Shown here: positions 1 through 21,694 of the stretch, piece by piece
How positions within the stretch are numbered: the stretch's first letter is position 1
Layout of the letters: every line of letters starts with the position of its first letter
From: Haplodiscus bocki
Taxonomy: Eukaryota
Assembly: GCA_965655095.1 (NCBI GenBank)
Contig: OZ296658.1
Span: 46,252,001 to 46,316,000, forward strand
Direction of reading: 5' to 3'
DNA length: 64,000 bases
The notes under the pieces: generated by a model
Database searches by the model: none
Told to the model about the DNA's origin: nothing
The model's input: the letters and a program-made list of their open reading frames with translations, nothing else
Program-made: the position numbers and the translations under genes

Positions 1-425
1 AAAAACGATGACTATACATGGCACTAACAAAGAGTTTTTAAAGTTTGATAGAGATCTTTTTTTCAAACAAAAGGAAACAATATACAAAAACTGAATGAAG
101 TTTTGGGAAGTTTTACAAGTGACAAGAATGTCTTAAGTAGTGGAAATTACGAAATTCATTGAAAATGTGAATGTTTTGATGGAAACACTGTAAAGAAACA
201 CGAAACTTGTTCTGAATAGACGTATTTTTAATAAATACCCTGGCCAAAAATTAAACAAAAATCCTAGATTTTAATTTCCTAAGAGAACTTGAAAAGAGAA
301 TTTCATAAGTTTGTTTTGAAGGAAAAAAATCTGACAGAGGAAGGTCAGCAAAACAAAGTGTTTTTCACTGAAGAAATTACGACTATTACCGTGTTGCTAA
401 TGGAACTCGAAATACGAAATTACTG
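1..425 (+). pseudogene. Penton/minor capsid-like gene, C-terminal remnant (first, partial copy)
   Basis: Frameshifted translation EFLKFDRDLFF...SDKNV..IH*KCECFDGNTV...NKYPGQKLNKNPR...EEGQQNKVFFTEEITTITVLLMEL resembles the Polinton penton C-terminus pattern (KCDCIxGSxVNG...PGxKIxxEP...LEDDxxxxVDFNxExxxFTxQL) as I recall it. Confidence 0.55.
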
Positions 426-689
426 ATAAGTTTTACCTATACATTATGGATAAACTAATAACCAACCGGAGATTGAAAAACCTTCCCAAAATTTGTAAAA
501 TTACTTCTTGTCATTCTTTGTTAATTTTACAGGAGAAAGATTACACTTCATAGGTTGAAGTAGGAGAAAGAATATTTCGCGTGGCTCTCCGAGCTTTTGT
601 TTGAACTGTTAGCTTGGTTAGTATTCATCCTTTACAAATAAGTGTAACTACTAAATTGATATTTCATACAACAGAAAAAAAACTGAAGA

Positions 690-945
690 CATAATAGTTT
701 TATTTAATTTAATTAAACAGTGGTTTTAAAGTTGAATAGACTGAAATGACACTGCAAGAGACATTACAACCTAAATTAGGGGAACCACGGGAGTTATTTT
801 CATTTGATGTACCTTTAGAGTTATGAGACGATTGTGCTGGTCAAGAAGATGGATATATGTTAGGACTAACTAGCTTAGACGTAAAACTTTCCGTTTCTAA
901 AAAAACTCGAGAAAAAATTTAGAATGAAACGTGTTAACCTGAAAG
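690..945 (+). pseudogene. Penton/minor capsid-like N-terminal remnant (also ~3220-3470, ~5770-6030, ~8310-8545)
   Basis: LQETLQPKLGEPRELFSFDVPLEL*...YMLGLTSLDVKLSV here; the second copy reads SWMLGLTSLDV. Matches the FxxPLxL...WxxGLxSLExYNSxFNI start of single-jelly-roll penton-like proteins of Polinton-like elements. Confidence 0.5.
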
Positions 946-1225
946 TACGCAGCGCAATAGCTAACAAACACGTCAATCATTCAAACCACGAAAAGATTTT
1001 GTTGAAAGATCAGAATAAAAGCTTGCAGAAGATGAAACAACAAGACCGGTTGTTAATTAAAAATTATTGGAACAATTTTCAAAATCCTGGCAGAGCGTAT
1101 GGTTTTTGTGCAAAATTTAATAAATCAGGAGTATCTAAAAGTTGAAGAGTAGCATTATCTACTAACTCTGATGTAATTTTTTGTCATACTGGAAACTACT
1201 AAATCTTGACGACTTTGTACTGATA
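924..1225 (+). pseudogene. Small basic virion core/membrane-active-like protein remnant (also ~3450-3745, ~6010-6310, ~8543-8845)
   Basis: ORF 924..1145 plus read-through: QNPGRAYGFCAK..SGVSKS*RVALSTNSDVIFCHTG. The fourth copy reads KNPGKAFGLCVKAGSVGVSRS*RAALSKTSDVV. Recognised only as a small gene typical of such elements; function inferred. Confidence 0.35.
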
Positions 1226-1226
1226 A

Positions 1227-1720
1227 ATGAGTACTTCTAAGTTATTTCCATCTGCACCACTAGAAACAAAAAACAATGTTGAAGAGAGGTTAGCCTATTG
1301 AAAGAACAAAATAAACCTTTTTCAAGTTTTTTCTGAAATTTTTGAAGATTTGATAACCTACTTGATACATAAAAATCGTGAATCGAAAAAGAATTATTAG
1401 AAATCTTTTCGAAAACTGGTATCGAGGTTTTGAAAATCTAATGAGTCCTATAAAAAAATTTTGCTAAAACATCTATTTGTATTTCTTTAACTGCTTTTGG
1501 ACTTGTTTTCAAAGTAATACCAATATCAATTGCAGTAGCAAGTGGATTAACAATTAGAGAGTAAAAATTGACGCAAAGCACAAAAAATGTGAAATTATAT
1601 TGAGACAAGAGAACAAACTACTATCACTTTTGATAAAGATTATAGAAAATGTTCACATGATAACACAATGGGCAGAATGAGAGCCTTATAGAACTTTTCT
1701 CTCCAAAAAAGTCGAATGTG
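1227..1720 (+). pseudogene. Putative membrane protein with N-terminal PSAP motif (copy 1)
   Basis: ATG at 1227 gives MSTSKLFPSAPLETKNNVEERL, then ITYL.HKN.ESKKNY and a hydrophobic VIPISIAVASGL segment. Multiple stops and frameshifts. Confidence 0.5.
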
Positions 1721-2344
1721 TAAAAAAAATTTCCTCAAAGTGTTTTTTATACAATTGCTTCTTGGTATTGAAGAGAAAAGTAAACCACGCAGAGGGCAAA
1801 ACTGCTTTTTGAGCCTCGATGAGAAATTTCGTACAGCTAATGCTCGAAGTGATGGCTACACTTTACCCAGAGAACAAATTAGTTTGAAAAAATATTTTCG
1901 CAGGGACTGAAAGAAAATCTTCAGATGTAAAGAGAACCTTTATTGAATAATGAAAGGATGAAAAATGGATGCCGACTCATAACAAAAAAGAACACAGAAA
2001 CTGCAGTTCGATCGATTGTGAGCTTTTTTGTGTACTTTTTGTTATTGAAAGCAGAAAGTTCTTCACGCGAACATTGTAAATCTTTTTTTTGTAGGAGTTT
2101 GATTTCAAGGCGGAGCATATTTGAAAATGAAAATTTTGAAAGTTGTTTCTCGTGGGGATGCCAACAAACTTGGCCCTTCTGCAAGTTGGGACATGGACAT
2201 ATTTGTTATTTCCATATCTTCTCAGCAGTTTGAAAGTCCTAAGAAAGTTTAAACAAAAGCGACGTGGCCCAAACAATCACTAAAAATTCGCTACCTGAAC
2301 GTTTTGCTGTATAATGTTTAGTGTAGTGATATGAAAGACATGCT

Positions 2345-4905
2345 GTAAGGATTGAAAAACAAATATATTGAATCAAAGTGTAAATTACACAAGAAGTACA
2401 TTGATACTGAAGATAAATCGTTAGGTTTCCAACTTGTAACGTATGAAGTGAGAGAAATTGGTAACACATTAAAAACAGTTTCACTTGAAAATTCTAGCGG
2501 AAGCGATGCAGGAACTGGTATAATAGCAGTTGGTTTTAAAATAAAAAAGTTATGATTACACATTGCACTCGCAAGGAGTTTCTGAAATTTGATAAAAAAC
2601 AATTTTGTATAAAAAAAACTATTTACAGAAACTGAATGAGCTTTGGGAAGTTTGACAAGTGGCAAGAACGTTATAAGGAGCAGAAAATTTAAAGTTGGTT
2701 TGAAATGTGAATGGTTTGATTGAAGCAAAGTAAAAGAAACACAAAACTTGTTTTAAAAAGACAAACTTTCCAAAAACACCCTGGCCGAAAACTAAACAGA
2801 AAAGCTAGAATTGAGGATCATAAGAGAGCATTTGTTTCTGTTTTGAAGGAAAAAAATCATTAGATGAAGAGGAGCAAAACAAACTACATTCTTTTGATGA
2901 AAATACTACCGTTACCAACTTGCTAACGAAACGCCAACTATAAAGCTATTGATAAGTATACACTTTACAGTACGTATAAACTAATATACAATCTGAGGTT
3001 GAAAGGCCTTCCCAAAATCTGTAAAAGTACTTCTTAACATGCTTTGTTGATTTTATAGGCAAATGAATAACCTTCACAGGTTGGAGAAGGTGGAAAAACC
3101 TCTTCGCGTGGCTCTCCGAGCCCGGGAACTGTTGAACTGCTAGGTTGTATAGCATTCCCTTTTTACAGTTTTGTTAAATTACTAATTTGATTTTTTCTAA
3201 AACAGAAATTGAAACTGAATAAATGATAATTTTCATTGCAATAAGCAGTGGTAATTTACATGAATAGGCTAAAACAAAACCGCAAGAGATATTAAGACCT
3301 AAAAAAGCAAGACCAAAGTATTAAATTTCTTTTGATATATCTTTAGAAACAGGAGATGATTGTGCTAGTCAAGAAGACAGTTGGATGTTAGGGCTAACTA
3401 GCTTAGATGTATAGCTAACTGTTTTTAGAAAAAAAAGAAAAAGAAAACGAAAAGTGGTAAATTAAAGGGACGAAACATTTTAGCAAACAAACCTCTCAAC
3501 CCTTCATATAACAAAAAAATGGTGATGAATAGTTAGAATAGGAAGATCTCGAAGATGAAGCAAAGTCCGGTTGTTAAGGATAAATTATTGACACAAAAGT
3601 TAAAATTATGGAAAATTGTTTGATTTGTGTGCGGAACTAGATAAAGCAGGGGTTTTAGAACTTGAAGGTTGCTTCATCTACTAGCTCTGACATAGTAACA
3701 CTCTGTCGAACTAGATTGACTTGTTTCTTGAGAACTTTGTAAAATTATACGAGTACATCTAAAATAAATCCATCTGCACGACTAGAAACAAATAGCATTG
3801 TTCACAAGAGATTAACCAGGAAAAAAACCAAACCAAAAATTTATCAAAATTCTTGAAAACTGTTAAAGAATTGATAAATTACCTGAGATATGAAAATTGT
3901 GAATCAAAAAAATTATAGGTGTAAAATTATTATAGAGTTTTCAAAAATATAATGATACTTACATAGATTTTGCTACAACACCTATCGCTTTTACACTGTC
4001 TGATATAGGAACTAGTTTCATAGTAATACCAATATCAATTGGACCAGCGCGTGGAGTTACAATTAGAAAGTTAGTAAAAACTGAACTATTTATGGAAAAA
4101 CACTATAAATGTGAAAGTATAATGAGAGATGAGAACAGACTTTTAGCTCTTCTGATAAAAGATATAGAAAATGACCACAAGATAGCACGATTGTGAGCAA
4201 AAGAACCTTAAAGATATTTTAAATATAAAATGTTGAAATGTTTAAATTAGTAATGCAATGATTTTTTGTCAAAAAACTTTTTTACAACTGCTTTTTATTT
4301 TTTAAGAAAAAATTAAACCAGGCAGGAGTCAAAATTGCTCTTTGAGCCACAATCAGAAATTTCATAGAGCTACAGCTCAAAGTGATCGCTACACTTTATC
4401 TTGAAAAAAATAGGTTTGAATATATGTTTTTGCAAGCACTGAAAGAAAAACTGAGAAGAAAAGAATTTCTATAGAAAAGACAAAAACAGATGTAAAGAGA
4501 ACCTATATTGAAAATTGAAAGGATGAAAAATGGATGCCGACTCATAACAAAGAAGAACACAGAAACGGCAATTCGATCGATTGTGAGCATTTGTGTGTGT
4601 TTTTTCCATTGAAGGCAAAAAGTTGACTACGCGACAATGTAAAACTTTTTTGTAGGACTTTTTTTTCCAGGCAAAACATATCTCAAAACAAAAATTTTGA
4701 AGATTGTTTTTGGTAGGGAGGCCAACAAACTGGGCCCTCCTGGAAGTATGGACATGGACAACTTTGTTATCGCCAGATCTTCTCAGCAATTTGAAAGTCC
4801 TAAGGAAGTTTAAACAAGGGCGAGGTGGCCCAAACAGTCACTAAATGTTCGCTACCTGAACGGTATGCTCTATTATGTAAACTGTGACGATCTGAAAGAC
4901 AAGTT
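2345..4905 (+). repeat. 2.55-kb unit, copy 2 (penton C-term, penton N-term, core-like, PSAP membrane protein, protease, ATPase N-half remnants)
   Basis: Colinear with the other copies; contains the best-preserved Walker A (VGLFFPGKTYL, 4652-4684). Confidence 0.85.
4625..4905 (+). pseudogene. N-terminal fragment of A32/FtsK-like packaging ATPase (Walker A only; also ~2065-2345, ~7165-7435)
   Basis: gga ctt ttt ttt cca ggc aaa aca (4655-4678) = GLFFPGKT, followed by YLKTKILK...FVIARSSQQF. Copy 3 reads VEFSFPGKTYL and copy 1 reads VGV*FQGGAYL. Confidence 0.7.
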
Positions 4906-7435
4906 GTAAAGAATGAAAAACAAATATGTTTAATCAAAGTGTAAAATACACAAAAAGTACAATGATACTGAACATAAATCGTTGGGTTTTCAACTTGTAA
5001 CATATGAAGTGAGGGAAGGTGGTGACACATTAGAAACAGTTCTACTGGAATTATCTAGCGTAAACGATACAAGAACTGATTTAAAAGCAATTGGTCTGAC
5101 CATAAAAAAAGTAAGGAATATACTTGGCACTAACAAAGAGTTTTTAAAGTTCGATAAAATTTTTTTTTTGTACAAAAAACGATTAGCAAAAACTGAATTA
5201 GCTTCAGGAAATTTTACAGGTGACACGAATGTTACAAGTAGTGGAAAATATAATTTTCTATTAGAATATGCATGTTTTGAGAGAAGCATAGTAAAAAACG
5301 ATAAAAACGGCTTTAGAGGGGCATATTTTCAACAAACAGCCTGGCTAAAAATTAAACAGAAAACCTAAGAATAAAATTCGCCAGAGAGCATTTAATTCTG
5401 TATTGAAAGGAAAAAAAATATTTAGGTGAAGGTGAGCAAAACAAAGTATGTTTCTTTGATGAAAATACGATCATTACCCTATTGCTAACCAACCCCGAAG
5501 TACAAAGCTACTGATAAGTATATACTTCACAATATGCATAAACTGATATACAATCTGAGATTGAAAGACCTTCCCAAATTTTGTAAAATTACTTGTTACC
5601 ATGCTTTGTTGACTTTATAGGCAGGAGAACGACCTTCACAGATTACAGATCGTGGAAAATACTTCTTGCCGTGGCTCCCCGAGCCCCTGAAGTGTTACGT
5701 TGTATAACATTCCCCCTGTACAAAAAATTTTATTCACCAATTTGAAAATTTCTACACCAAAAATTAAAACTGAAGATTTATTAGTTTTAATTGCAATGAA
5801 CAGTGGTTATTTACTTGGAAAGACTGAAACAAAACCGCAATAGACATTCAAAACCTAAATTAGCAAAACCACAGGAGCGATATTGATTTGATGGACCTTC
5901 AGAATTAAGAGACGAGTAATCTAGTCAAAAAAACAGTTGGATGATAGGACTAACTAGATTAGATAAAAAACCTTCTGGTTTCAAAAAAAAACTAAAACAA
6001 GAAATACAAAACTGAAATGTGTTAAATTAAACGGACAAAACACCTAGCAAACAGACACGTTAATATTTCATAAAACAAAAAATTGGTAATGAATAGTTAC
6101 AATACGAAGATCTAGAAGATGAAACAAAGGCCGGTTGTTAAGGATAATTTACTGGAACAAAAATAGAAATATGGAAGAGCGCTCGATTCATCTGCAAAAC
6201 TTGATAAAGCAGGGGTTTCTAGAAGTTGAAGGCCAGCTATATCTACTAGCTCTGACATAGTAACAGTTTGTCATACTAGGTTGATTTGAATCTTTTCAAC
6301 TTTTTAAAATGAAACCGAGTACTTCTATGTTATATCTATCTGGAAAATTGAACACAAATATCCTTGTTCAAGAGAGATTAGCCAGGAAAAAAACAAGAAA
6401 CGCTTTTTTCAAAATTCTTCAAAACTATCAAAGAATTGATAACTTACCTGAGATATGACAATTGTGAATCAAAAAATATTAGGAGTAAAAATATTCTTGA
6501 GCTTTTAAAAATATACTGTTACTTGCATAGTTTTTGCAACAACATCTATCTCTATTACAATGTCTGATGTAGGAACTAGTTTCACAGTAATACCAATATC
6601 AATTGGACCAGCGCGTGGAGTTACAATTAGACAGTTAGTAAAAACTGAACTATTTATGGAAAAACACTATAATTGTGAAAGTATAATGGGAGATGAGAAC
6701 AGACTTTTAGCACTTCTGATAAAAGATATAGAAAATGACCACAAGATAGCACGATTGTGAGCAAAAGAGCCTCAAAAGGATATTTATTTCAAAAAATTCA
6801 AATGAGTAATGAACTGATTTTTTGTCAAAAAACTTTTTTTACAACTGCTTTTTATTTTTTAAGAAAAATGTAAACCACGCAGGAGTCAAAATTGCTCTTT
6901 GAGCCACAATGAGAACTTTCATACAGCTACACTTTATCCTGAAAAAAATAGGTTTGAATATATGTTTTTGCAAGTACTGAAAGAAGAACTTACAAGAAAA
7001 GAATTTTTATAGAAAAGACAAAATCAGATGCAACAAGAACCTATATTCAAAATTGAATGGATGAAAATTGGATACCTACTCATGTCAAAAAAGAACACAG
7101 AAACGACATTTCGATCGATTGTGAGCATTTGCGTGTAATTTTTGCTTGTGAACTCAAAAAGTTCTCTACGCGACAACGTAAAACTTTTTTGTAGAATTTT
7201 CTTTTCCAGGCAAAACATATCTCAAAGCGAAAATTTTGAATTTTTTTGGAAGGGTTGCCAACAAATTGGGCCGTCCTCGAAGTAAGCACATGGACAAAAT
7301 TGTTATTTCCAGAACCCTGTAGCAGTTTGAAAGTCTTAGCGAAGTTTAAACCGTGGCTCAAAGGGTCAGTCAAAAGTTGGCTACACGAACGGTTTGCTGT
7401 ATCATGTATTTTGTAGCGATTGGAAAGACATGATG
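4905..7435 (+). repeat. 2.55-kb unit, copy 3
   Basis: Colinear with the other copies; ORF 6560..6760 (TSFTVIPISIGPARGVTI) is the hydrophobic part of the PSAP-type membrane gene. Confidence 0.85.
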
Positions 7436-8053
7436 TATGGATTGAAGAACAAATATATGGAATCAACATATAAAAGACACAAAAAAACATCGATACTGAA
7501 CATAACTCGTTAGGTTTCGTAATTGTAACACACGAAGAGAGAAAAGGAGAGAAACTGATAACACAATTAAAACAGTTTTACTTGGAAAAACTTCCGGAAC
7601 TGATACAAGAACTAATATAATAGCAATTGATTTTACAATGAAAGTGCTATGGTTGTACATGGCACCCACGAAGACTTTTTAAAATTTTTAAAAAAGCAGT
7701 TTCCACACAAAAATACGATTTATAGAAACTGAATGAACTTTGAGATGCTTTACAGGTGACAAGATTCTCATAGTTGTTGGAAAGTAAGAAAGTCGCTCGA
7801 AATGTGATTTCATTAGTGGAAACTTTGTAAGACAAAGACGAACACTTGTTTTGAATAGAGATACTCTTAAAAATTACCCTGGCCAAAAACTAAACAGAAA
7901 ACCTAGAATTAATAATGATTTGTTTGAAAGCATTTGCTTCTGTTTGAAGAAGAAAAAGGATTAGATGAAGATGAGCGAAACAAAGTACAATACTTTGATG
8001 AAATTACGACCGTTAGCAACTTGCTTACGAAATTCGAACTACAAAGCTACTGA
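7435..8053 (+). pseudogene. Penton/minor capsid-like gene, C-terminal remnant (copy 4)
   Basis: SKCDFISGNFVR...NYPGQKLNRKPRI...LDEDERNKVQYFDEITTVSNLLTKF across frameshifts. Confidence 0.55.
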
Positions 8054-8849
8054 TATGTATACACTTTACAATACGGACAAACTAAAATACAACCTGTGAG
8101 TTAAGGACTTTTCCAAAATTTGTAAAAGTACTTGTTACCACGCTTTGCTGATTTTATAGAAGGAAGAATTACCTTCACAGGTTGGACAAGGAGAAAATTA
8201 ATACTTCATGTGGTTATCCGAGCCCCTGAGTTGTTACGTTGTATAACCTTTATCTTGTTCAAATATTTTTAATTACTACTTTGAGTTTTTGTATACCAAA
8301 AATTAGAACTGAAGAATTAATAATTTTAATTGCAATAAACAATTGTTTTTTACTTGAATTGACTAAAACAGAACAACAAGAGACATTAAAAGCTAAATTA
8401 GCAAAAGCACGGGACTGATATTAATTTTATGTTGCTTTAGAATTAGGAGACCATTGTGCTAGTCAACAAGACGGTTGGATAATAGGATTAAACAGCTTAG
8501 ATAAAAAACTTTCTGTCTTTAAAGGAATTTAAAAAACTGCGAATGAAAAGTGTTAATATAAAGGGACGAAAGATTTTAGCGAACAAACAGGTCAATCATT
8601 CAAACAACGAACAGTTAGTTATGAATATCTAGAAGATGAAGATCTAGAAGATGAAACAATAAAACCGCTTGTTAAGGATAATTTGTTGGAAAAAAATTAA
8701 AAATCCTGGAAAAGCGTTTGGTTTGTGTGTAAAAGCTGGAAGCGTAGGGGTATCTAGAAGTTGAAGAGCAGCTTTATCTAAAACCTCTGATGTAGTCACT
8801 TTTTTGTCATACTGGAGAGGTTTTCACTTTGACAACTTTGGATAGATAA

Positions 8850-9370
8850 ACGAGTACTTCTAAGTTATATCCATCTGCTCCACTAGAAACAAATAGCTTT
8901 GTTCCCGGAACATTGGCCGGAAAAACAAACAGAATAATTTTTTTTCAATCCTCTTGAAACAAAATTAAGGAATTGACAACCTACTTGAGATATGAAAATC
9001 GTGAACCATAAAAGAAAAATTAAAAAAAGAAGCTAGTATCGAGCTTTTGAAAAACTAATGAGAAATATATAACTGTTGCTACAATATCTATCTCTATTAC
9101 ATTATCTGCTAAGGCAAATGGTTTGATGGTAATAGCTGTATCAACTGGTGCAGCAAGTGGATTGATAAATAGAAAGTTAAAAAGAGAAGAATTAGTTATG
9201 CAAAAGCTCATAAGTTGTGAAAAAAAATTGAGAGGGTACAACACACAACTCTTTCTTTTGATTAAAGATATAGAAGTGAACACAAAACAAACGATAATAC
9301 GATTGCGAGAAGACGAGCAAAAAAAGTTTGTTTTCACTTTTTTTACAAAATAGTCAAATCAGTTTAAAAT
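8850..9370 (+). pseudogene. Putative membrane protein with YPSAP motif (copy 4)
   Basis: (ACG)STSKLYPSAPLET at 8850-8891, then TTYLRYEN, then ATISISITLSAKANGLMVIAVSTGAASGLIN (overlaps ORF 9123..9353). Confidence 0.55.
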
Positions 9371-9725
9371 TAAATTTTTGTCAAGTTTTTTTTACAACTG
9401 TTTCCTATTATTTAAAAAAAGTAAACCACGCAGGGGGCAAAAGTGCTCCTTGAGCTACAATCAAAAATTTCTTACAACTAAAGCTCAAAGTGATCTCTAT
9501 AAATTACCAGAAGACAAATAGTTTTAACATAACATTTTTGCAAAGGTTGAAAATGAGCATAGAAGAAAACGACTTTTTGAGAAAAGACAAACAATTTGTA
9601 CAGGGTGCCTTTAAAGAAAACCTAAATGGATGGGAAATGGATGCCTACTCATTTTTAAAAACAACCCAAAAACAGAAATTCGATCAATTGTGGACATTTG
9701 TGTGTACTTTTTGCTACCTATGGCA
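9370..9725 (+). pseudogene. Adenain-like (clan CE) cysteine protease remnant (also ~1720-2050, ~4255-4612, ~6810-7150)
   Basis: PTHF*KQPKNRNSINCGHLCVLF at 9644-9712; copy 2 reads PTHNKEEHRNGNSIDCEHLCVFF. This fits the Q-x-x-x-x-S-x-x-CG-x-x-C catalytic-Cys motif. Upstream GQNC..ARSDGY may be decayed GxHW..FDSYG (weak). Confidence 0.55.
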
Positions 9726-9729
9726 ACAG

Positions 9730-10390
9730 TTTTCCACTTGAACGATGTAAAACTTCCTTTGTAGGAACATCTATTCCAGTTAAATTTTATCTAGAACTGA
9801 AATTTTTGAAATTTGTTTTCGGTAAGGATGCCAACAAAGTCAACCTTCCTCAAAGTAGGGACATTTTTGTTTCAGCCAGATCCCCGCAGCAGTTTGAAAG
9901 TCTTAGCGGAGTTTAATTGAAGGCAACGTGGCTGAGAGAGTCCCTAAAGTTTCTCTACCTAAACGTTTCGTTTTTAAATCTAATGTTTTACTTTTTGATG
10001 AAAAATGCTGGTATTATTGTTTTCGATGATTAGTTAGATCCTAAACAGAAGGCAAATATTCCACTTTTTAAAAAAGGAGGTCGGGAAGATTTAGATGTTT
10101 AATGTTCATCTCACGCTTATTTTGATTTTCGAGGAAAAACTGTTTTGGAAAACTTGCTGCAATTTTTTTTGAACATTTTTTAAATGACGTGGAAAACGTT
10201 TACAGAGATAATGCTGGGTTTGATATTGATTAAATTGAATTTGAGGATCTTTGTAGAGAAATAAGGAGAGGTGAAGATTATGATTACTTGGTTCTTGATC
10301 GATCTAAAAACGAAGTGATGGTAAAGAATATTTTTGTAACGAAAGCGAAGAAACATATATAGGATGTAAACCAGAAACAAATTCATTTTG
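9730..10390 (+). pseudogene. A32/FtsK-family DNA-packaging ATPase, near full-length pseudogene
   Basis: RCKTSFVGTSIPVKFYL (decayed Walker A)...RDIFVSARSPQQF...NAGIIVFDD*L (Walker B)...LFKKGGREDLDV*CSSHAYFDF (decayed RGRH / SQSYF)...LNDVENVYRDNAGFD...EFEDLCRE...YDYLVLDR...YIGCKPETNSF. Confidence 0.85.
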
Positions 10391-10409
10391 CGTGTACAAT
10401 CAAGAAGCA

Positions 10410-11480
10410 TTTTTCACTGGAAAAAGTTGGTTAAGAAATTTTGAAAGAGCTAGCAGAGTTACGACTGAAAGTGAAACAAGTGCGGGTACGAGAAACAGAG
10501 GGTTTTCATTATGTTGCAAAAGGATCATTTGAACCAATTATAAAGACAGTTAAGGAAACAAGTGAAAAAGCTGTTGTAGAATGTAAATGCACAAGTGCAA
10601 CAAACATGATTAAAATTTTAAAAATTTTCCAGGAACAAGTGTTGTTAGTGCCTTTGCTCAGACAGAAAAATTTTCTGATGAAGCATTAAAAACAAAAAAA
10701 AGAAAATGGAGCAAAACCAAGTATTTCTGGCCATTTGTTTGGAAAAATAATTGCTTTTGATACAAGAATTGTGTTACACCCAACTGCTAGATAGCAAAAA
10801 GATGGGGAACAACATTACCTACTCATTCAGAAGCATCCTGTTAAAACTGAGTGGGATAAGATTGTTTACCAAGAAGTTTATGATAAACCATTCAAGTCTT
10901 TTGATTCGCCAAGTGATCTGTTCGAAGTGATTTCCGACAGAAACTTCAAAAACAGGAAATCTGAAGCTTTTGAAGTTTTCCCCAAGTTTCAAGTTCAAAT
11001 GAGTTTCAATACTAAAAGAGATGTTAGAGCAAATGAGAGAAAATAAACGTGTAAAAAACTATGTTATTTTAGGACAAAACACTCCATTAGGTAAAGAGTA
11101 TATTGCTAACTAAACAACTTTTCCGAATGATCCTCCAGGTAGCTCAAAGACACATTATAGAACGTAGCGGAGTCAAGGAGTTTGATAGATCATCGAGGCA
11201 ATTTTCCTTCATAAGCTATGATGATGATATTGATTTTTAAACTGAAGATGAAATAAAAAGAAATAGTACTCAATCTCTCATTGGGTTAGAAATTTTTCTC
11301 TTTTTGAGAAATAGTTGAAAGAGTTTGTAATAGAAATTGCATTTAGTAAAACCAGAAAAGTAAGGCGGAAATGATAAGAAAGTTATTTGATGAAAAAAAA
11401 GAAGGATTTCATTGATGACTTCTTAGAAATCAACTGTAATGACCAATTTCAGCACAAAAAATTTTAAGCAATCGTTTTGT
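10410..11480 (+). pseudogene. Polinton-associated coiled-coil protein of unknown function, pseudogene
   Basis: ORF 10441..10689 (ELAELRLKVKQVR..GFHYVAKGSFEPIIKTVKE), a middle section LLIQKHPV..DLFEVISDRNF, and C-terminal KLHLVKPEK*GGND...IDDFLEINC..QHKKF. Lies between ATPase and MCP. Confidence 0.5.
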
Positions 11481-11489
11481 ATCATAAAA

Positions 11490-12752
11490 GTTCCCTTTAG
11501 CTCCTTATTAAGTTGTACTTAGATATCTTCCTTAAAAAAATTATCCCCGATATACTCCTGACGCATTGAACCTTGCTAATAAAGAAAATTCTCAAACTTC
11601 TATTAGAATTTCTCATGCGGTTATATAATCTATATCTTGATTTAGCAAATTTTGTGAATCAATAGACTGGCATTCTCCATTCATATTCAGGTTGGGATCA
11701 TGAATAATCAGTATTTTTAGGATCCATTGTTGTCTTCAGTAATATTATATTGACCATTAGTAATGGAAGGAAACACAAATTTTTGATATTGATCGTTTTG
11801 CATGCTCGATGTATATATCATTAACTGGTAGCAAAGGTACTTACGGTTTGTCAATCAACTTTCACCTGACAAAGAAGTACCTGGAAGAGCATTGACCAAA
11901 AATAAAAAAAACTCAAAGAAAATATCAAGTAAGAGTTTTTTTAAAGGAGTTTTTTTTGGTATTGCTGTGCAACAAGAAAAAGCTACAGATGGGTTAGGGT
12001 ATATATTAACACTGCAACGAATTAGTGATAATATTGTATGGGTCATGAGCTAGCGGCTGGTGCTGCAGCTAACGATGCTATACCTGGAGGAATTGTGATG
12101 AAGGATATTAGTTAGTACCACAGCATACTCAAAATGCTTTATGGCAAATTTTATGGATGGAATACATTGTATGCTGCAAAATATTTGATTTTTTTGATAG
12201 ATCAATTTTTACTGAAGATATTCACACTGATTTACTTTTGGTTTTTTGAGTTGAGAGTTGAAGAAAAAGTTGACGTCCCGAGTTATAATGAAGTCGCGTT
12301 TCTGCAAATGGCTCAAATAGATCTATTAGCATAAAATATCGACTCAATCTGCAGACCATCTGTTTCATGTACTCCATTTTTTTAGTTACGTCAAAAAATC
12401 TCTACAGATGAGGTAAGTTATTGTGATTAAACGATTGATAAAAATTCTCAAGCATATCAAGAGATTGTGTCCCATTTTAGACGTTTGTCGAAGGATAATT
12501 TTCTTCAATCATATAGTACGCAAAAGGTTTTTTGACAGCTTGTGTTAAGTATCCAGACGGTAGTCCTGCATACAATTTTTAATATTTTTCATATACATGT
12601 TTCAACAACAAGATTTTCTAATCCTCAATCTAAAAAAAACTGATTTCAAACCAATTGCTCTAGCTGTACCTAAATGAATTGGGTATGCTCTAGCCTTGAC
12701 TAATAAAATTTTATCAAATAGTGAATTCGGACAACAATCAATCGTCCTAAAT
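11490..12752 (+). pseudogene. Double jelly-roll major capsid protein (hexon-like), apparently full-length pseudogene (~420 codons)
   Basis: Across frameshifts: YPRYTPDALNLANKENSQ...LGSIVVFSNIILTISNGR...FGIAVQQEKATDGLGYILTLQRISDN...WFFELRVEEKVDVPSYNEVAFLQ...NSQAYQEIVSHFRRLSKDNFLQSY...GYALALTNK. The FGFxExxxKxxYGxxxxLxLxR block is characteristic of Polinton/adintovirus capsids. Confidence 0.8.
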
Positions 12753-12759
12753 CAAAACT

Positions 12760-13567
12760 TCTTTTTTTGTTCGCATTTTTACACTTTTTCAATGATATTT
12801 CCGATATATGTAGCAAAGCTTCAATAAATTTCTCGGATAATTGGTTTATTTGATAAATTAGTTTTGCAACATTAAAAATTTCTGTAAATGTATGTAACTC
12901 ATCGCACTACTTTAAAATATCACCGTTAGAAAAAAATTCTACAGTTTCAGTTGAAACACTGATTTTAAACTTTGGTTTTTTTTCTATCTAATCTCTATTA
13001 GGTTTTTGTAAACAACCTCTCCATTGTTTTTCAATTGTGTTTGGATTGGTGCTTACCTTTTGAAGAATGCCTTGAGTTGTTTTGTTTTGTTTTTCATTCA
13101 CTGAAGTTTTTTCATTTATCCCATTAGCATTTCGTTTTTCGTAAATAAGTTTTCTAAAGCAGATTTCTAATGATGATTCTGTAAAAACTTTTTGAACTGA
13201 CCTTTTTGATGTGAAGTGACTGTAACTGCTAATCATTTCATCTCCAGAAAGTCCTTGAAGCTTTTGTTGACGAACTATTTTCCATCAGAAGTCTCAATTA
13301 ATTTTAGTTTTCTTTCTGATGATATAGTATTATTTTCCATTGCATCTGTTTTGGTTTGTGCATATTGAGTTTTAGAAGCAACTGTCCATCCAAATTGATA
13401 AAACTCTCTAATACTATTAAAAAAAGTAGGAAAAAACTTTTACAATTGAGTCAAAAAAGATCCTGCTCCATTTATCATCTGTGTCAGATGCATCCGCTTC
13501 GTTGGTAGTTTGAATCTTTTAGGGGATTAGCATGACTGTCCTTTACAAAAATACTATTTTTTTTCAT
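12760..13567 (-). pseudogene. Retroviral-type (RVE, DDE) integrase of Polinton, pseudogene
   Basis: Minus strand from ATG at 13567: IFVKD...SIREFYQFGWTVASKTQYAQTKTDAMEN.TISSERK...LIETSDGK*FVNKSFKDFL...YSHFTSKRSV..FTE...NANGINE...VVYKNL...FFSNGD. These match the IDxFSKFGWxVPLK / IETDxGxEF / AERFNRT regions, all decayed. Confidence 0.82.
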
Positions 13568-13596
13568 CTAGCAACCTGAATACGTATTTCCTTCCC

Positions 13597-14800
13597 TTAA
13601 TTCAACGAATCGCTTTCAAATGCATAACCATATTTTTGTTTATCTTCAAGTTACACAATTTGTTTTCCTAGATTCCTGTATTCTTGTTACATGCATGTCA
13701 TTCCTAAAAAAAATTGTTATAAGATTTTTCTTCTTCTGTAAGTTTCCAAAAAGGCAATCACTACACTTATCAACTCCTACATTTTTAAGTGTTCCTTCGG
13801 TTACTCTTTTTGGTTCCTTTTCCACTTTGATCTTAGTTCTGTAAGCATATCCTTTTCGTTTTAATGCACAGATTTCATCTCTTGTTAATGTTTCAAGACT
13901 TTTCATTCTCCCTAACTTCAGACAAAACTCAGGACATATCCTAAGTTTTGAAGAAAAGTCAAAAGTGATGTGTTTTTTGCATTTTTCCAATTGCCAACAT
14001 TTGATCTCATTTTAGTATGCGGCTACAAGTAAAAGAATCGGTATCCTTATTTTGGAAAATTAGATTGTTTTTCGCCATGAAATAGATGTATTATACTAAA
14101 GTAACTTTCTTACACTTGTTTCTTCTGAAATTTCTAAAATTGTAAAATTTACGAAAATTTCCAATGGTATCAATTTTCTTTCCTTCCAAAGAAGCTATTT
14201 CCAAATTGCTGTTTTACACACCTTTCATATTCAATTCCAGGTACTGGTTTTTTTCTGACATCCTCCGTTTGATTTCTATATAAATGGAATTCATCTTTCC
14301 GGTATGGGTTTTCCAAAATTCAAATCTGCTTCATCTGGTGACTTAGTTTTTTTCATCTACACACTTTTCCATCCATTGTTTTTGGTAAAATCCTACAACT
14401 TTTTTTAACTTAGTAATTTTAATACCATGTCTAACACTTTATTTTCTTTTCTTGAAGGACAAAAGTTGTCTTTTTTATCCGACCAATCACGAGTATGTTT
14501 CCCTGCTAGTTTTATATTATGTAGTATAATTTTTTCCATGTAGTTTGTGAATGATGATAGATCTTCTGTTTTAGACTCTGGACAAAAAAGAATGTATTTT
14601 GTTTTGTGTTGGACTTTTCTGGGTATTTTCGATCTTTTTCTAAAAACTAACCAACTTCAGCATCTTTTGTTGTTGCAAATAATTTTTTCAATGGTATGTT
14701 TTCAATAAATTCAATCTTTGTTTATGGTAAAGCATCTGGATTGGAGCCTCCAGAAAAATTCTTTGGATCATCAATTTTTTATCATCACCCTTACCATAAT
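13597..14800 (-). pseudogene. Protein-primed family B DNA polymerase (pPolB), C-terminal half, pseudogene
   Basis: Minus strand: ALP*TKIEF...DAEVG*FLEKDRKYP...DWSDKK...VRHGIKITKLKKVVGFYQKQWMEK...NFTILEIS...KDTDSF (14031-14045)...FDFSS...LGRMK..DEICALKRKGYAY (ORF 13646..13990)...EDKQKY. Stop at 13597-13599. Confidence 0.88.
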
Positions 14801-15399
14801 TTCTGTTGCGATGTACTTTTAGTGCAATTGAGTGAGGTGGCATGCAGTTCCTTCTACTAGATTGAGGCTTGATGCAGCTAACTTTCGATAACAAAGTCTG
14901 TCATGGTTGATTGGAGTGCACTGGAGCGCGTTGTGTACGGCTTCTTGCCCATAAATTCCGAGAGGTACTATCTATCTGCTTTCGAGTGAGTTTTAATGCG
15001 ACTCTTTTCAACTAAAAGCATAAACACTGTAGTCGTTGAATGGACATGAAAAGAGATGTGGTATGGATCAATTTCGAATGATTAGAGATTGGTGGATATG
15101 ATGTTTAGCTTGACCTTCCCTGAGGTGTATGTCGAATCCTCAACTAGTTTCATAAATGTCACATATTCATTCGTATAACTGTCGGGAAGGATGTTATTTT
15201 ACAAGATGAAGTTCATGTGAGTCAAACATAATGCTTCATAACATATTATATATCACGAGCTAATAGTTAGAAATAAGGGATTCAGAAGAGGACATACGAT
15301 TAGAGTGAGTTATGTTTAGTTAAAGTTAAGAATTTTTTTCATAAGAACACGATAATAACCATTTCATTGAAACTGATTCATGGAATTGTTTTTTTTTGA

Positions 15400-16300
15400 A
15401 CGTTGACCGCTAAACGTTCTTGATCACAAGGTAAGCGGCCTAAGTTCATTAAATTGCATTTTGCATTAATTAAACTGAAAACCCACTACTACTTCAAGGT
15501 TCCGTGAGACACTTTAGACAATTCTGGTTGCTTCCAAAAGTTTTTATTGTTCAAATTTCTTGTCTTTCATGTTTTGAAAGTGGATGACAGGCCTAAAATA
15601 TCACATCCGATTTTTTTCCGTCGAGCAAAAGTTTAAAAAGGACTTTATTACTTTCAGTAGTTGATTTTTTCTCCTTTTCCTCATTTTGCACAGGATGCGC
15701 GGAATCGTCAGTAGCTTGCACGATACAAAAGGATACAATTGTTGCATGGTGCCGCGCTCAAGTAGCTCACAGGGAGTGAATTAAAATGTCGCTGTCGCCC
15801 AAGTTTCTACCTTATTCTAGACATTTGCGGACACATTCTCTTCCATAAACCGTAGAGAGCTTATGCTGAGCGGTCTCGTTTTTCTCGATCTGTCTGACGT
15901 AATAGAAACACACCGTTGTTTCTCAGAAAGTTTGAAAGTAGTGGGGAACATTTTGCGACCTTCATAAAGGATCGGAAAAATAGGGGTGGAAGTTTATGAA
16001 ATTCTCCGAAATATTATTTGTAATTGTGAGTTTTTCCCAGATTTTTCTACTGAGTTTGTTTTCACTGCTCAGTTTCTCCGCGGTCAAAAACCAAAAACTT
16101 ACTCCAGTAATTTTCCTTTTGAGGCAGTTGATTTTTTGCGATCCCCACAACCAGGGAATGCCGAAAAAACGCAATCAGTATTCAATTTCCTTGAAATTGC
16201 AAGTCATCTTCTCCAAATTTTCAAGGCTCAAACATTTCATCTGGGAGTCAGTCGTAACCCATGTTATTGTACAGTAGTTTTCACTCACAATCATTGGTTC
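15400..16300 (-). pseudogene. Possible decayed OAS-like (Pol-beta superfamily) nucleotidyltransferase
   Basis: 16222->16165 reads ENLEKMT/(+1 nt)/AISRKLNTDCVF, four G>A changes from GSLGKxTAISxKxDxDCVF. Downstream SISSLRFMEE..SLPVSYL..LLKVIKSFL only loosely resembles an OAS C-domain. Weak. Confidence 0.25.
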
Positions 16301-17513
16301 CCTTCTTTTTGTTAGAGTACTGAAAGTCGATAAGCTGGGAAAAGGTGCTTTTACTTTTGGAAGAACTAGACTTTCAAATTCTTAACATTCCGTATCTGCT
16401 AGCTTGATCTAAATCGAAAGTTTTCAAACTGTGGCGCACGATTCCGTTGGGGAACCGTCGTCTTTTTTTCTTGCACTGAAATTCCGATAGTTTTAAAATT
16501 AAAAACGGCTATTAACGTTGATTAATCTCGAAATTCAAACTCATAAATCTCCGTAACTACTGCTTCATTTCATCGAGGTTTCAAACGAAAAGTATTCATT
16601 TGTTGAGTAGGGTTTGCTTTTATGTTGGAAAACGGAAGTTGTTTCTCCAGATACAGTTGAAACTTAAGCAGTTTCGTTGGAATCTTCTGGTACTCATCAT
16701 TTTACTGCAAAACTTGTAGTCTTTTCCGTCTGACCTTCCTTCGGTAAATTTGCGCCCTTTCCTTTGTCCAAAATTTTAGTTGAAACAGTTGCCTGATTTT
16801 TGCCTCTTCGAGATGCTCAACTGCAAAACTGACTTAAAAATGTTAACGCTGAGGCTCTAAAACCTCTTCAATCCAAGCTGAAGGGATTATTTTATGTCCA
16901 ACTTTATTGCACTAGACTCACTCAAAGGACGAATTTTTCCCAATCTCAAACGGCCTCCAAGTTTTCTCTCCTACTTCTCCTATGAAGTACAAAAAAAGAC
17001 AATTCAGCTGAGCAGCGAAGTCATCTGTCAGGGTTGAAAAGGTAGATTCATGTGCTTGAAGTTATTTTTAGGCACCCGAGGGGCCTTTCCAGTCTTTGCA
17101 GTCCAATCGTATGGACTTACCGCAGGTATTGCAGGAAACACAAGCCATGTTAAGAAAAGCGAAAGATAGAGACGCGATGAAACGAGTTTTAATCTAAATC
17201 GGCCAGAAGATCACGGTAACTCACAAATTGTTCCCATACACAATGTTTCAGAATTTCCTCGATATTATTGTCTATCATGTGCACGACAGAAAAATTTGTC
17301 AGGTTGCTTCCAGAAATTATTCACTTTCTGAAAGAAAAAAGTTATCGGAGAGAAGCATGTATTATCATCAATTCATCGCCAACTTTTCAGAATTTGCCGA
17401 TTGAAATGTTTTTTTTCTGCAGTGTAAAAGTTTTGTATCGTTCTTATATTATATTGTCAGCGTCAGGGGCATACCTGGATGAAACATACATCTACTGAGC
17501 AGCTCAGTTTGCT

Positions 17514-20085
17514 GCAAAAATTTCACGCTTGAATTACTTAGGTCAAAAAGTGGACGAATCCAGACTGACTGTAACAGCTGATTCCACCTTTCGCCCACGT
17601 CTTCCCTTTATGTATCATAAGACAAAAGGAATTGGATTTGTAGTATCATTGGATCAGCAAAATTTTACGCTTGAATTTTTCAGGGAAAAAAGTAAACGAA
17701 TCCGAACTGAGTGCAACAACCGATTGCACCCTTCGCCCATGTCGTCGCTTCATGTATCAAAATTCCAAAAGAATCGGATTCAGTGTTTTATTGAATAAGC
17801 AATTTTTTAATCTTGAGTTACTTAGGTAAAAGGTAAACGAATCGAGACTGACTGTAACAACCGATTTGACCTTCTCACATGTCTTCACTTTTTGTATGAA
17901 AATTCCAAAGGAATCGGATTTAGCGTCTCGATGGATAACCGTCTTTTACCCTTCAACTATTCAGAGCAAAAAAGAAATGAATCCAGACTGACTGTATTAA
18001 TCGATTGCACCCTCCGCCCAAGTCTTACTTTTAGGTATCAAAATTCAAAAGGAAACGAAATTAGTGTTTCATTGAGAAGGCGATATTTCACTCTTGAACT
18101 ACTTAGGGCAAAAACTAAACGATTCCGGACTGACTGTAACAACCGATTGCACCGTCCACGCATGTCTTCTTTTTTAAATCAAAGTTCAAGTTCAATGGAT
18201 TTAGTGTTTCATTGAATAAGCAATATTATACAATTGAATTACTTAAAGCAGATGTAAACGAATCCAGACTGACTGTAACAGCTGATTCCACCTTTCGCCG
18301 ACGTCTTCCCTTTATGTATCATAAGACAAAAGGAATTGGATTTGTAGTATCATTGGATCAGCAAAATTTTACGCTTGAATTTTTCAGGGAAAAAAGTAAA
18401 CGAATCCGAACTGAGTGTAACAACCGATTGCACCCTTTGCTCATGTCTTCTCTTAAATATCAGAATTCAATTGATTTGGACTTAGTGTTTCATTGAATAA
18501 GCAATAATTTACTCTTGAATTACTTACAGCAAAAGCAAACGAATCCAGACTGACTGTAACAACCGATTGCAACGTGTGCTCATGTTTTCTCTTCATGTAT
18601 CAAAATTCGAATTATTTGGAATTAGTGTTTCATTGAATAAGCAATATTTTACTCTTGAACTAATAGAGCAAAAGTAAACGAATCCAGACTGACTCTAGCA
18701 ACCGACTGCACCCATCGCCCATGTCTTCTGTTTCTGTATCAAAATTCAAAACAAATCGCTTTGGGTAATTCCTCGAAAAAGCAATATTTTATTCTTCAAA
18801 TACTTGAGGCAAAAAATAAACGAATCCAGACTGACTGTAACAACCTTTTGCACCCTTCGCCAATGTGTTCTCTCTTTGCATCAAAATTCAAAGGGAATCG
18901 GATTTAGTATTTCCTTGAATAGGCAATATTTTACTCCTGAATTACTTGGGGCAAAAAGTAAACAAATCCACACTGACTGTAACAGCTGATTCCACCTTTC
19001 GCCCACGTCTTCCCTTTATGTATCATAAGACAAAAGGAATTGGATTTGGAGTATCATTGGATCAGCAAAATTTTACGCTTGAATTTTTCAGGGAAAAAGG
19101 TAAACGAATCCAGACTGAGTGTAACATCCGATTGCACCCTTCTTCATGTATCAAAATTCCAAAAGAATCGGATTCAGTGTTTTATTGAATAAGCAATTTT
19201 TTACTCTTGAGTTACTTAGGTAAAAGTAAACGAATCGAGACTGACTGTAACAACCGATTTCACCTTCGCACATGTCTTCTCTTTTTGTATGAAAATTCTA
19301 TAGGAATCGGATTCAGTGCCTCGATGGATAACCACTCTTTTACCCTTCAACTATTCAGAGCAAAGAAGAATTGAATCCAGACTGACTGTAATATCCGATT
19401 GCACCCTCCGCCCAAGTCTTACTTTAATGTATCGAAAATTAAAAGCAATCGGATTTAAAGTTTCATTAGATAAGCAAAATTTTACTCCGGAAATAATTAG
19501 AGCAAAGTAAACGAGTACAGACTGACTGTAACAACCGATTGCACCCTTCGTCCATATCTTCCTCTCGTGTATCAAAAATCAAAAGGAATCGGATTTAGTA
19601 TTTCATTGAATAGGCAAAATTTCACTAATGAATTACTTAGAGCAGAAGTGAACGAATCCAGACTGAGTGTAACAGCCGATTGCACCTTTCGCCCACGTCA
19701 TCCCTTTATGTATCATACGACAAAAGGAATTGGTTTTAGAGTATCATTGGATTAGCAAAATTTTACGCTTGAAATTTTCAGGGAAAAAAGTAAACGAATC
19801 CGAACTGAGTGTACCAACCGATTGCACCCTTCGCTCATGTCTTCTCTTTAAGTATCAGATATCAAATGATTTTGACTTAGTGTTTCATTGAATAAGCAAT
19901 CTTTTACTCTCGAAGTACTTACAGCAAAAGCAAACGAATGCAGACTGACTGTAACAACCGATTGCAACGTGTGCTCATGTTTTCTCTTCATGTATTAAAA
20001 TGCGAATTATTTGGAATTAGTGCTTCATTGAATAAGCAATATTTTACTCTTGAACTACTAGAGCAAAAGTAAACGAATCCAAATG
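17514..20085 (+). repeat. Satellite HOR domain: ~10-mer (~1400 bp) built from two related 5-mers
   Basis: TGTATCATA(A/C)GACAAAAGG at 17611, 18315, 19019 and 19709 (spacings 704, 704, 690). Alternate 5-mers are most alike (1408 and 1394 bp apart). Confidence 0.75.
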
Positions 20086-21694
20086 AACGATTCCAGAGTG
20101 ACTGTAAAAACCGATTGCACTCTTCACCATGTCGTTTCTTTATGCATCAAAATTCAAAAGGATTCCGATTTAGTACTTCCTTGAAAAAGCAATAAAGTAC
20201 TCTTGAATTACTTAGGGCAAAAATTGACGAATCCCGGCTGACTGTTACAACCGATTGCACCCTTCGCCCATGTCTTCTCCATATGTATCAAACTTCAAAA
20301 TGAATCGGATTTAGTGTTTCCTTGAATAAGCAAACTTTTACTCTTGAATTACTTAGGGCAAAAAAGAAACGAATCCAGACTGACTACATCAGCCGATTGC
20401 ACCCTTCGCCCATTTTTCCTCTTTATGTATCAAAAGTCAAAAGGAACCAGATTTAGTGTTTCATTGAATAAGCAATATTTCTCTCTTGAATTACTTGGGG
20501 CAAAAAGTAAACGAATGCAGACTGACTCTAACAACCGATTGCACCCTTCATCCATGTCCTCTCTTTTTGCATCAAGATTCAAAAGGAATCGGATTTAGTA
20601 ATACCTTGAATGGGCAATGTTTTACTCCTGAATTACTTGGGGCAAAAGGTGGACAAATCCAGACTGACTGTAACAGCTGATTCCACCTTTCGCCCACGTC
20701 TTCCCTTTATGTATCATAAGACAAAAGGAATTGGATTTGGAGTATCATTGGATCAGCAAAATTTTACGCTTGGATTTTTCAGGGGAAAAAGTAAACGAAT
20801 CCAGACTGAGTGTAACAACCGGTTGCAACCTTCGCCCATGTCGTCGCTTCATGTATCAAAATTCCAAAAGAATCGGATTCAGTGTTTTATTGAATAAGCA
20901 TTATTTTACTATTGAATTACTCAGAGCAGAAGTGAACGAATCCAGACTGACTGTAACAGCCGACTGCACCCTTCGCCCATGTCTTCCCTTGATGTATCAA
21001 AAATCAAAGGGAATCGGATTTAGTGTTTCCTTGATTAAGCAATATTTTAATATTGAAATACTTAGAGCAGAAGTAAACGAATCCAGACTGACTGTAACAG
21101 CCGCTTGCACCCTTCGACCATGTCTTCCCTTTATGTATCAAAATTCAAAAAGGTTTGGATTTATAGTATCATTGGATCAGCAATTATTTACGCCTGAATA
21201 ACTAAAAGCAAAAGTAAACGAATCCAGACTGACTGTAACAACCGATTGCACCCTTCGCCCATGTGTTCCTTTTACGTAACAAAATTCAAAAGGAATTGGA
21301 TTTAGAGTATCATTGGATCAGCAATATTTCAGGCTTGAGTTACTTAGAGCAAGAGTAAACGAACCCCGACAGACTGTTACAAGCGATTGCAACCTTCGCC
21401 CATGTCTTCTTTCAAAGTATCAAAATTCAAAAGATTTGGATTTAGTGTTTCATTGAAAAGGCGATAATTTACTCTTGAATTAGTTAGACCAAACGTAAAA
21501 AACCTCGACTGACTGTAACCGTCGACTGCACCCTTCGACCATATCTTCCCTTTATGTATCAAAATTTGAGAAGATTTGGAATTTTAGTATCCTTGGATCA
21601 GCAATTAGTTATGCCTGAATAACTAAAAGCAAAAGTAAACGAATCCAGACTGACTGTAGCAACTGATTGCAACCTTCGCCCATGTTTTTTCCAT

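What the first reader, a model, noticed from the sequence alone, without database searches (positions are those of the whole stretch)
1..10010. A macrosatellite made from viral structural genes: 2.55-kb tandem amplification with its breakpoint between ATPase Walker A and Walker B
Seen: four colinear units. Each of the first three ends just after the ATPase N-half (Walker A) and jumps back into the middle of a penton-like gene. Only the last copy continues into IIVFDD and the rest of the ATPase (~10010 onward). Inference: one internal duplication of the provirus was expanded by unequal crossover or rolling-circle amplification, turning a virion module into a satellite-like array next to a true satellite. 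This predicts that the leftmost unit, outside the window, is preceded by the missing 5' half of the penton-like gene.
Basis: partly seen in the sequence, partly recalled or inferred. Interest (0 to 1): 0.8.

Follow-up and report, generated by a model that had tools for sequence, protein, structure and literature searches.

The report
Decayed 2.55-kb tandem repeat array
A 2.55-kb stretch of DNA was copied head-to-tail into five now heavily mutated copies beside a large satellite block; the array is real but ordinary, and no test available here shows that it was made from virus genes.

Summary
The repeat is real. Window 1-~10005 holds four colinear units of 2.53-2.57 kb. The public contig that carries the window (ENA ERZ26859043, ctg81241, 97 kb) shows a fifth, leftmost unit and the start of the array. 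All four internal junctions lie at the same aligned place, and the last unit runs on into unique sequence. The copies are old (K2P 0.22-0.40) and diverged with no codon-phase bias.

The viral reading is not supported. Each of the six reading frames carries 33-55 stops shared by at least three copies, as many as a random ancestor would give. So the unit was already non-coding in the copies' last common ancestor. Ninety-nine stop-free pieces gave no hit better than E = 0.014 in Pfam. PHROGs and NCBIfam gave nothing consistent, PDB and three 5.8-billion-protein searches gave no relatives, and a profile search of 1.84 billion proteins gave one spurious repeat.

What remains is one strict Walker-A-like motif, in one copy, and a Walker-B-like hexamer at the right edge. 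A decayed virus origin stays possible (about 0.2) but unproven.

The parts
1..2340 (.). Array copy X1. Its first ~184 nt lie left of the window, on L002 7267-7450. The right bound is the junction zone, +/-25 nt.
2341..4900 (.). Array copy X2
   Evidence: closest to X3 (K2P 0.22)
4901..7430 (.). Array copy X3
7431..10005 (.). Array copy X4, the last and most diverged (K2P 0.36-0.40). It runs on into the unique right flank.
2312..2360 (.). Junction zone X1/X2. The same aligned position is found at 4873-4921, at 7404-7452 and at L002 ~7220-7266.
9981..10022 (.). Right breakpoint zone, where homology of X4 to the other copies ends
4655..4678 (+). The only strict Walker-A-like pattern in 1-12000, present in X2 alone
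   Evidence: copies compared
10013..10030 (+). Walker-B-like hexamer (four hydrophobic residues, then DD) at the right breakpoint
9659..10359 (+). It is unverified. It is broken by several stops and at least one frame change, and is given here as one part.
   Evidence: no family, structure or protein hit
10023..17519 (.). Unique spacer between the array and the satellite. It has no similarity to the array and no domain hit. The strand skew flips near 12000.
17520..64000 (.). 142-bp satellite with a 283-bp dimer period and 72-74% matches. It runs off the window end.

Best explanation
This is an old, neutrally decaying five-copy tandem array (a small macrosatellite) in gene-poor, AT-rich DNA 7.5 kb from a large 142-bp satellite. 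The host is an unidentified eukaryote assembled from a metagenome.

Inferred history:
- One duplication joined the right end of a 2.55-kb segment to its left end.
- Unequal crossing-over between the copies, or a single burst, then raised the number to five at roughly one time.
- Later, copies X2 and X3 exchanged about 1 kb by gene conversion.
- The leftmost copy took up a ~930-bp insertion.

The segment had no long reading frame in the copies' last common ancestor, and it has drifted without selection since. The array therefore most likely does nothing as a coding unit. The origin of the segment is unresolved. It shows faint signs of a coding past on the A-rich strand, but nothing ties it to virus genes.

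Shown: the structure, the single junction, the divergence, the shared stops and the absence of homologues. Inferred: the recombination mechanism, the order of events and the lack of function.
For: - Four units in the window, plus a fifth unit and the array start on the public contig.
- Four junctions colinear at one position.
- K2P is 0.32-0.40 between most pairs, which is near star-like. X2-X3 is 0.22 overall and 0.10-0.15 in the 3' kilobase.
- ts/tv is 0.86, so there is no RIP-like bias.
- Substitutions show no codon-phase bias: 1 of 115 windows had p < 0.05.
- There are 45-55 shared stops per + frame and 33-34 per - frame. The longest run free of shared stops is 109 codons on + and 123 on -.
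- The total of shared stops is 148 on + against 154.8 +/- 9.6 in a random-ancestor simulation, and 100 on - against 111.3 +/- 9.5.
- No alternative genetic code opens the frames.
- Ninety-nine stop-free pieces were scanned against Pfam. The best E-value was 0.014, which is the chance level for that many queries.
- No relatives turned up in 5.8 billion protein clusters apart from gene calls on this same contig.
- The independent public record has the same structure at 99.89% identity.
Against: - Weak signs of a coding past remain. Period-3 power exceeds the 95% null in 29% of array windows. In the middle of the unit the three + frames carry 40, 19 and 20 shared stops. The + strand is purine-rich from L002 ~1500 to window ~12000.
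- A Walker-A-like and a Walker-B-like motif lie about 83 codons apart in homologous coordinates. A pairing like that arose in at most 1% of shuffles.
- Each copy has accumulated roughly 0.17 substitutions per site plus indels, and searching was restricted to short stop-free pieces. The homology searches therefore had low power, and their silence does not exclude an old coding or viral origin.
- Absence of function is inferred; no expression or chromatin data were available.
Confidence: 0.7

Rival explanations
1. The unit is a relic of a provirus with a double-jelly-roll capsid (Polinton/Maverick-like or similar). It would hold the 3' part of a penton-like gene, further genes and the N-half of an A32/FtsK-HerA-type packaging ATPase. 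The duplication breakpoint would lie between Walker A and Walker B.
For: - A Walker-A-like pattern lies in X2 at 4655, flanked by hydrophobic residues. IIVFDD lies at 10013 in the last copy's continuation, about 83 codons downstream in homologous coordinates. Such a pair arose in 0 of 300 shuffles of 4.6 kb and in 1% of shuffles of 12 kb.
- The + strand is purine-rich and has a weak period-3 signal, strongest at 10200-10900.
- The stretch after the Walker-B-like motif reminded me of the post-Walker-B region of A32-like ATPases. That is recollection only, not a test.
Against: - The motif pair was picked after the fact.
- Strict Walker A is present in 1 of 5 copies and partly in its nearest relative.
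- A profile of the four Walker-A pieces found no P-loop protein in PDB at E <= 10. In 1.84 billion representatives it found only one spurious repeat. The single intact piece found no P-loop protein in PDB either.
- Pfam, PHROGs and NCBIfam were silent on all the ATPase pieces.
- The claimed C-half consists of five pieces of 22-42 codons, about what random sequence gives.
- The claimed N-half carries 6-7 shared stops in every + frame.
- No polymerase, integrase, protease or capsid domain was found in 3.8 kb of left flank or 7.5 kb of right flank.
- No TIRs were found.
- The AF2 model of the 144-residue 'penton-like' piece was unusable, with pLDDT 48.
- For: a significant score for the ATPase spanning the right breakpoint, or a less decayed relative of the locus that carries recognisable capsid and ATPase genes in the same order.
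Confidence: 0.2
2. The unit is a relic of some other coding sequence, such as a non-viral mobile element or a host gene fragment. It died long before it was amplified.
For: - Weak period-3 signal, unequal shared-stop counts between frames, and purine skew over about 6.9 kb of parental sequence.
- Location in repeat-rich DNA next to a satellite.
Against: - No reverse transcriptase, transposase, integrase or other domain in 99 pieces.
- No other copies of the unit among 5.8 billion protein clusters, which include the same assembly.
- The open-stretch statistic also deviates in the satellite and in the flanks, so it is not specific to coding relics.
Confidence: 0.25
3. The array is an assembly artefact: a collapsed or falsely expanded repeat.
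For: - The contig comes from a metagenome assembly.
- All 19 differences between the window and the public record fall inside the array.
Against: - The units differ by 20-32%, far too much for an assembler to confuse them.
- Each junction has its own private substitutions.
- Two versions of the sequence agree on the structure.
Confidence: 0.03

Closest known systems
Macrosatellites, i.e. kilobase-unit tandem arrays (my own knowledge: for example human D4Z4, DXZ4, RS447)
   Same: The units are a few kb long and lie head to tail. They arose from one segment and are shaped by unequal crossing-over and gene conversion. They often sit near satellite-rich heterochromatin.
   Different: There are only five copies, and they are 20-32% diverged rather than homogenised. 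No unit has an open reading frame. Copy-number polymorphism and chromatin state are unknown.
Tandem arrays derived from mobile elements or endogenous viruses (my own knowledge: for example satellites derived from transposons, and endogenous pararetrovirus arrays in plant pericentromeres)
   Same: A fragment of a longer element is repeated with one fixed internal junction beside true satellite DNA.
   Different: Here the source element cannot be identified. No virus or transposon domain was detected.
Polinton/Maverick proviruses and polinton-like viruses (PMC4028283, PMC8097293, PMC11161782)
   Same: Only a motif-level likeness: a Walker-A-like and a Walker-B-like pattern at a spacing usual for P-loop ATPases.
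   Different: No polymerase, integrase, protease or capsid proteins, no terminal inverted repeats, no significant ATPase match, and no long frames even in the copies' common ancestor.

Membership tests
Kilobase-unit tandem repeat (macrosatellite) | Units of 1 kb or more, head to tail, in one orientation | tested here: met
   Five units of 2.53-2.57 kb. Spacing is 2509-2569 bp and no inverted copies were found.
Kilobase-unit tandem repeat (macrosatellite) | All units share one junction, meaning a single origin rather than separate insertions | tested here: met
   The four junctions are colinear in one alignment, and no unit has its own TIR or TSD.
Kilobase-unit tandem repeat (macrosatellite) | Copy number varies between individuals | not testable with these tools
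   Only one assembly is available, in two near-identical versions.
P-loop NTPase, A32/FtsK-HerA-type packaging ATPase | Walker A motif conserved in the copies | tested here: inconclusive
   The strict pattern is present in 1 of 5 copies (4655-4678). It is partial in one copy, altered in two and deleted in one.
P-loop NTPase, A32/FtsK-HerA-type packaging ATPase | Significant sequence match to the family or to any P-loop protein | tested here: not met
   Pfam, PHROGs and NCBIfam: none. PDB: none at E <= 10. 1.84 billion representatives: one spurious repeat only. Power is low on short decayed pieces.
Polinton/Maverick provirus | [quoted passage not shown] | tested here: not met
   No DNA_pol_B_2 or rve hit, nor any other, in the 99 stop-free pieces scanned (the longer ones from the 25 kb). 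These cover the array, 3.8 kb of left flank and 7.5 kb of right flank.
Polinton/Maverick provirus | Double-jelly-roll major capsid protein, penton protein and adenain-like protease | tested here: inconclusive
   No family or protein hit. The AF2 model of the 144-residue piece had pLDDT 48, so no fold search was run. Pfam covers these capsid families poorly.
Polinton/Maverick provirus | Terminal inverted repeats with a target-site duplication | tested here: not met
   No inverted repeat of 40 nt or more in window 1-17600. BLAST of the left flank against window 10001-20000, both strands, also found none. The element's ends, if there are any, may lie beyond the sequence held.

The most novel reading that the evidence does not exclude
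The 2.55-kb unit is the last trace of the virion-assembly module of a Polinton/Maverick-like or other double-jelly-roll virus. That module would have integrated next to a centromere-type satellite, died, and then been amplified across a breakpoint inside its packaging ATPase. That would make it a virus-derived macrosatellite.
Probability: 0.2. Interest if true: 0.45.

Novelty: new member of a known kind. Interest (0 to 1): 0.15.

Why it matters
As it stands, this is one more kilobase-scale tandem duplication in satellite-flanking DNA. It is useful mainly as a clean example:
- a single founding junction;
- near-simultaneous expansion to five copies;
- later local gene conversion;
- a way to read the coding state of the ancestral unit from stops shared among copies, without rebuilding any sequence.

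If a virus origin were shown, it would document how dead proviral fragments can seed satellite-like arrays at heterochromatin borders. Because the unit was already non-coding when it was amplified, no function or revival question attaches to it.

The work also shows that the public protein collection holds spurious 'proteins' called from this contig with TGA read through.

Tried and rejected
- **Family scans.** Pfam on 99 stop-free pieces from both strands of the array, both flanks and the nested insertion gave only chance-level E-values of 0.014 or worse. PHROGs gave no hit, and NCBIfam gave only far-sub-threshold hits (best E = 0.0023, 17 bits against a cut-off of 750).
- **Large protein searches.** Three searches of 5.8 billion clusters returned only gene calls from this same contig.
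- **Profile search.** The profile of the four Walker-A pieces found nothing in PDB. In 1.84 billion representatives it found one repetitive false hit, P0001.
- **Single pieces.** Searches against PDB and against phage genomes returned noise.
- **Structure.** The AF2 model of the 144-residue piece had pLDDT 48. No fold search was run, because it would be meaningless.
- **Alternative genetic codes.** None opens the frames.
- **RIP-like mutation.** Rejected; ts/tv is 0.86.
- **A gene on the - strand.** The longest open frames, 165 and 144 codons, have no relatives and fit the ordinary antisense shadow of an A-rich strand.
- **RNA genes.** None.
- **Naming the host.** Satellite words were not found in papers or in JGI metagenomes. 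The ENA accession is not in the paper library.
- **Extending right of the window.** Exact look-up failed.
- **Virophage comparators.** Accessions taken from papers (KT894027, OR738444) are not in the collections that can be fetched.
- **Microhomology at the breakpoints.** The left and right edges are 44-60% alike over about 45 nt. That is too decayed to call.
- **The 'fewest open stretches' statistic.** It looked promising on the + strand (19 against 28.5 +/- 2.9). It was rejected as evidence of coding because the satellite and the flanks deviate in the same way.

- One search printed long raw lists of positions at which paralogous units differ. They were not labelled as gene breaks and were not used.
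- In some searches the two pieces of the leftmost unit shared one counting row, in memory only. The counts were redone with the pieces kept apart and came out the same.
- Searches printed consensus lines or units of their own accord. I used none of them.
Full report
**1. The observation**

A direct-repeat scan of window 1-17600 finds families with four copies at spacings of 2509-2569 bp, and no inverted repeats. A MAFFT alignment of the four units gives 68-80% pairwise identity over about 2.5 kb. The unit nearest the satellite loses all similarity to the others near 9975-10020.

From 17520 to the end of the window lies a 142-bp satellite with a 283-bp dimer period and 72-74% matches. The 7.5 kb between array and satellite is unique. 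There are no Ns in the window. Nothing suggests the contig is human: it has 31-38% G+C, a 142-bp satellite and a metagenome source.

**2. Source and leftward extension**

A protein search with the longest open frame (7083-7577, - strand) returned only a gene call made on the window's own DNA (P0002). Looking that call up led to ENA metagenome assembly ERZ26859043, contig ctg81241_74.49x_l, 97,112 bp (L001). A second such call (P0003) gave L002, which is record 1-18653. Window base 1 corresponds to L002 7451.

The record and the window are 99.89% identical. To the left of the window lies a fifth unit. It runs from L002 ~3802-3850 to ~7266 and is interrupted by a ~930-bp insertion at L002 ~5078-6010, which has no TIR or TSD. 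L002 1-3800 has no similarity to the unit, to the right flank or to the satellite.

The array therefore has five units and begins at the phase that follows the junction in the other units. The organism stays unknown.

**3. Junctions**

The four internal junctions align colinearly, at L002 ~7220-7266 and at window 2312-2360, 4873-4921 and 7404-7452. The left edge resembles the junction sequence on its right side, and the right edge resembles it on its left side.

Decay limits the resolution to about +/-25 nt. Within that zone the two edges are only 44-60% alike, so microhomology can be neither shown nor excluded. The Walker-B-like hexamer at 10013-10030 lies in or just past the right breakpoint zone.

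**4. Age and mode of evolution**

- K2P distances are 0.32-0.40 for most pairs, so the tree is close to a star. X2-X3 is 0.22 overall, falling to 0.10-0.15 over the 3' kilobase of the unit. That pattern marks a later exchange between neighbours.
- ts/tv is 0.86, and each pair differs by 21-31 indel events.
- Substitutions between units fall equally on the three codon phases: 1 of 115 windows had p < 0.05. No reading frame has been under selection since the copies split.

**5. Coding state of the unit**

- No frame is open for more than 165 codons. No alternative genetic code does better than shuffled sequence.
- I counted stops that sit at the same aligned codon in at least three copies, without building any consensus sequence. 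Each + frame has 45-55 and each - frame 33-34. The longest stretch without one is 109 codons on + and 123 on -.
- The totals equal those of a simulated random ancestor: 148 against 154.8 +/- 9.6 on +, and 100 against 111.3 +/- 9.5 on -.
- In the last 500 nt of the unit, the claimed ATPase N-half, every + frame carries 6-7 shared stops.

The last common ancestor of the five copies was thus already non-coding. Because arrays can homogenise, this describes that ancestor and not necessarily the very first duplication.

Faint traces of a coding past remain:
- period-3 power above the 95% null in 29% of array windows, strongest at 10200-10900;
- unequal shared-stop counts between frames in the middle of the unit, 40 against 19 and 20;
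- a purine-rich + strand from L002 ~1500 to window ~12000.

A statistic counting the fewest open stretches needed to cross the unit looked non-random on the + strand. The satellite and the flanks deviate in the same way, so I do not count it.

**6. Tests of the viral reading**

- Pfam on 99 pieces from both strands of the array, both flanks and the insertion gave nothing better than E = 0.014, the chance level for that number of queries.
- PHROGs gave no hit, and NCBIfam only far-sub-threshold ones.
- The 30 public gene calls on L001 and L002 carry no Pfam hit, and they read through TGA.
Its AF2 model is unusable, with pLDDT 48.
- An alignment of the four Walker-A pieces (A1) matched nothing in PDB at E <= 10. 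In 1.84 billion representatives it matched only a repetitive false positive.
- The one piece with an intact GK[ST] found no P-loop protein in PDB.
- The pieces after the Walker-B-like hexamer found nothing.

In favour of the reading, a strict Walker A followed 50-120 codons later by a Walker B occurred in 0 of 300 shuffles of 4.6 kb and in 1% of shuffles of 12 kb. However:
- the pair was noticed after the fact;
- it needs coordinates carried over from one copy to another;
- the strict Walker A exists in one copy of five.

The stretch after the hexamer reminded me of A32-like ATPases. I could not fetch a comparator to test this: virophage accessions shown by papers are not in the collections that can be fetched. 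I wrote out no letters from memory.

With about 0.17 substitutions per site and a dozen indels per copy lineage, the searches had low power. I therefore rate the viral reading at about 0.2 rather than zero.

**7. Verdict**

The finding is a real but ordinary structure: an old five-copy tandem array made by one duplication and its expansion, decaying neutrally beside a satellite. The title claim, that it was made from viral structural genes with the breakpoint inside an ATPase, rests on two short motifs and is not supported by any search. If the segment ever was viral, it was dead before it was amplified.

Noticed in passing
window 17520-64000: A 142-bp satellite with a 283-bp dimer period and only 72-74% matches between copies. 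It keeps one orientation throughout and runs off the window end. A 127-bp variant pair lies at 52853-53105.
   Followed up: partly
window 12928-12980: A 54-bp fragment that resembles the satellite in inverted orientation (78% identity, E = 0.001). It lies inside the otherwise unique spacer.
   Followed up: no
L002 5078-6010 (left of the window): A ~930-bp insertion nested in the leftmost unit of the array. It has no terminal repeats, no target duplication and no domain hit, and its origin is unknown.
   Followed up: partly
L001 and L002 (ENA ERZ26859043, ctg81241): The public gene calls on this eukaryote-like contig read through TGA, as if a bacterial code 4 had been used. This puts spurious proteins such as P0002 and P0003 into the protein collection. 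None of the 30 calls has a Pfam hit.
   Followed up: yes
window 202-9135: All 19 differences between the window and the public record (15 substitutions and 4 one-base indels) fall inside the array. None falls in the next 8.3 kb. This could be allelic variation or polishing noise in paralogous repeats; it was not resolved.
   Followed up: partly
window ~12000: The strand composition flips. A exceeds T on the + strand from L002 ~1500 to window ~12000, and T exceeds A from 12000 to 16000. This suggests two old units of opposite orientation.
   Followed up: no
window 8621-8655: A 15-bp motif repeated 2.3 times, present only in the last unit.
   Followed up: no
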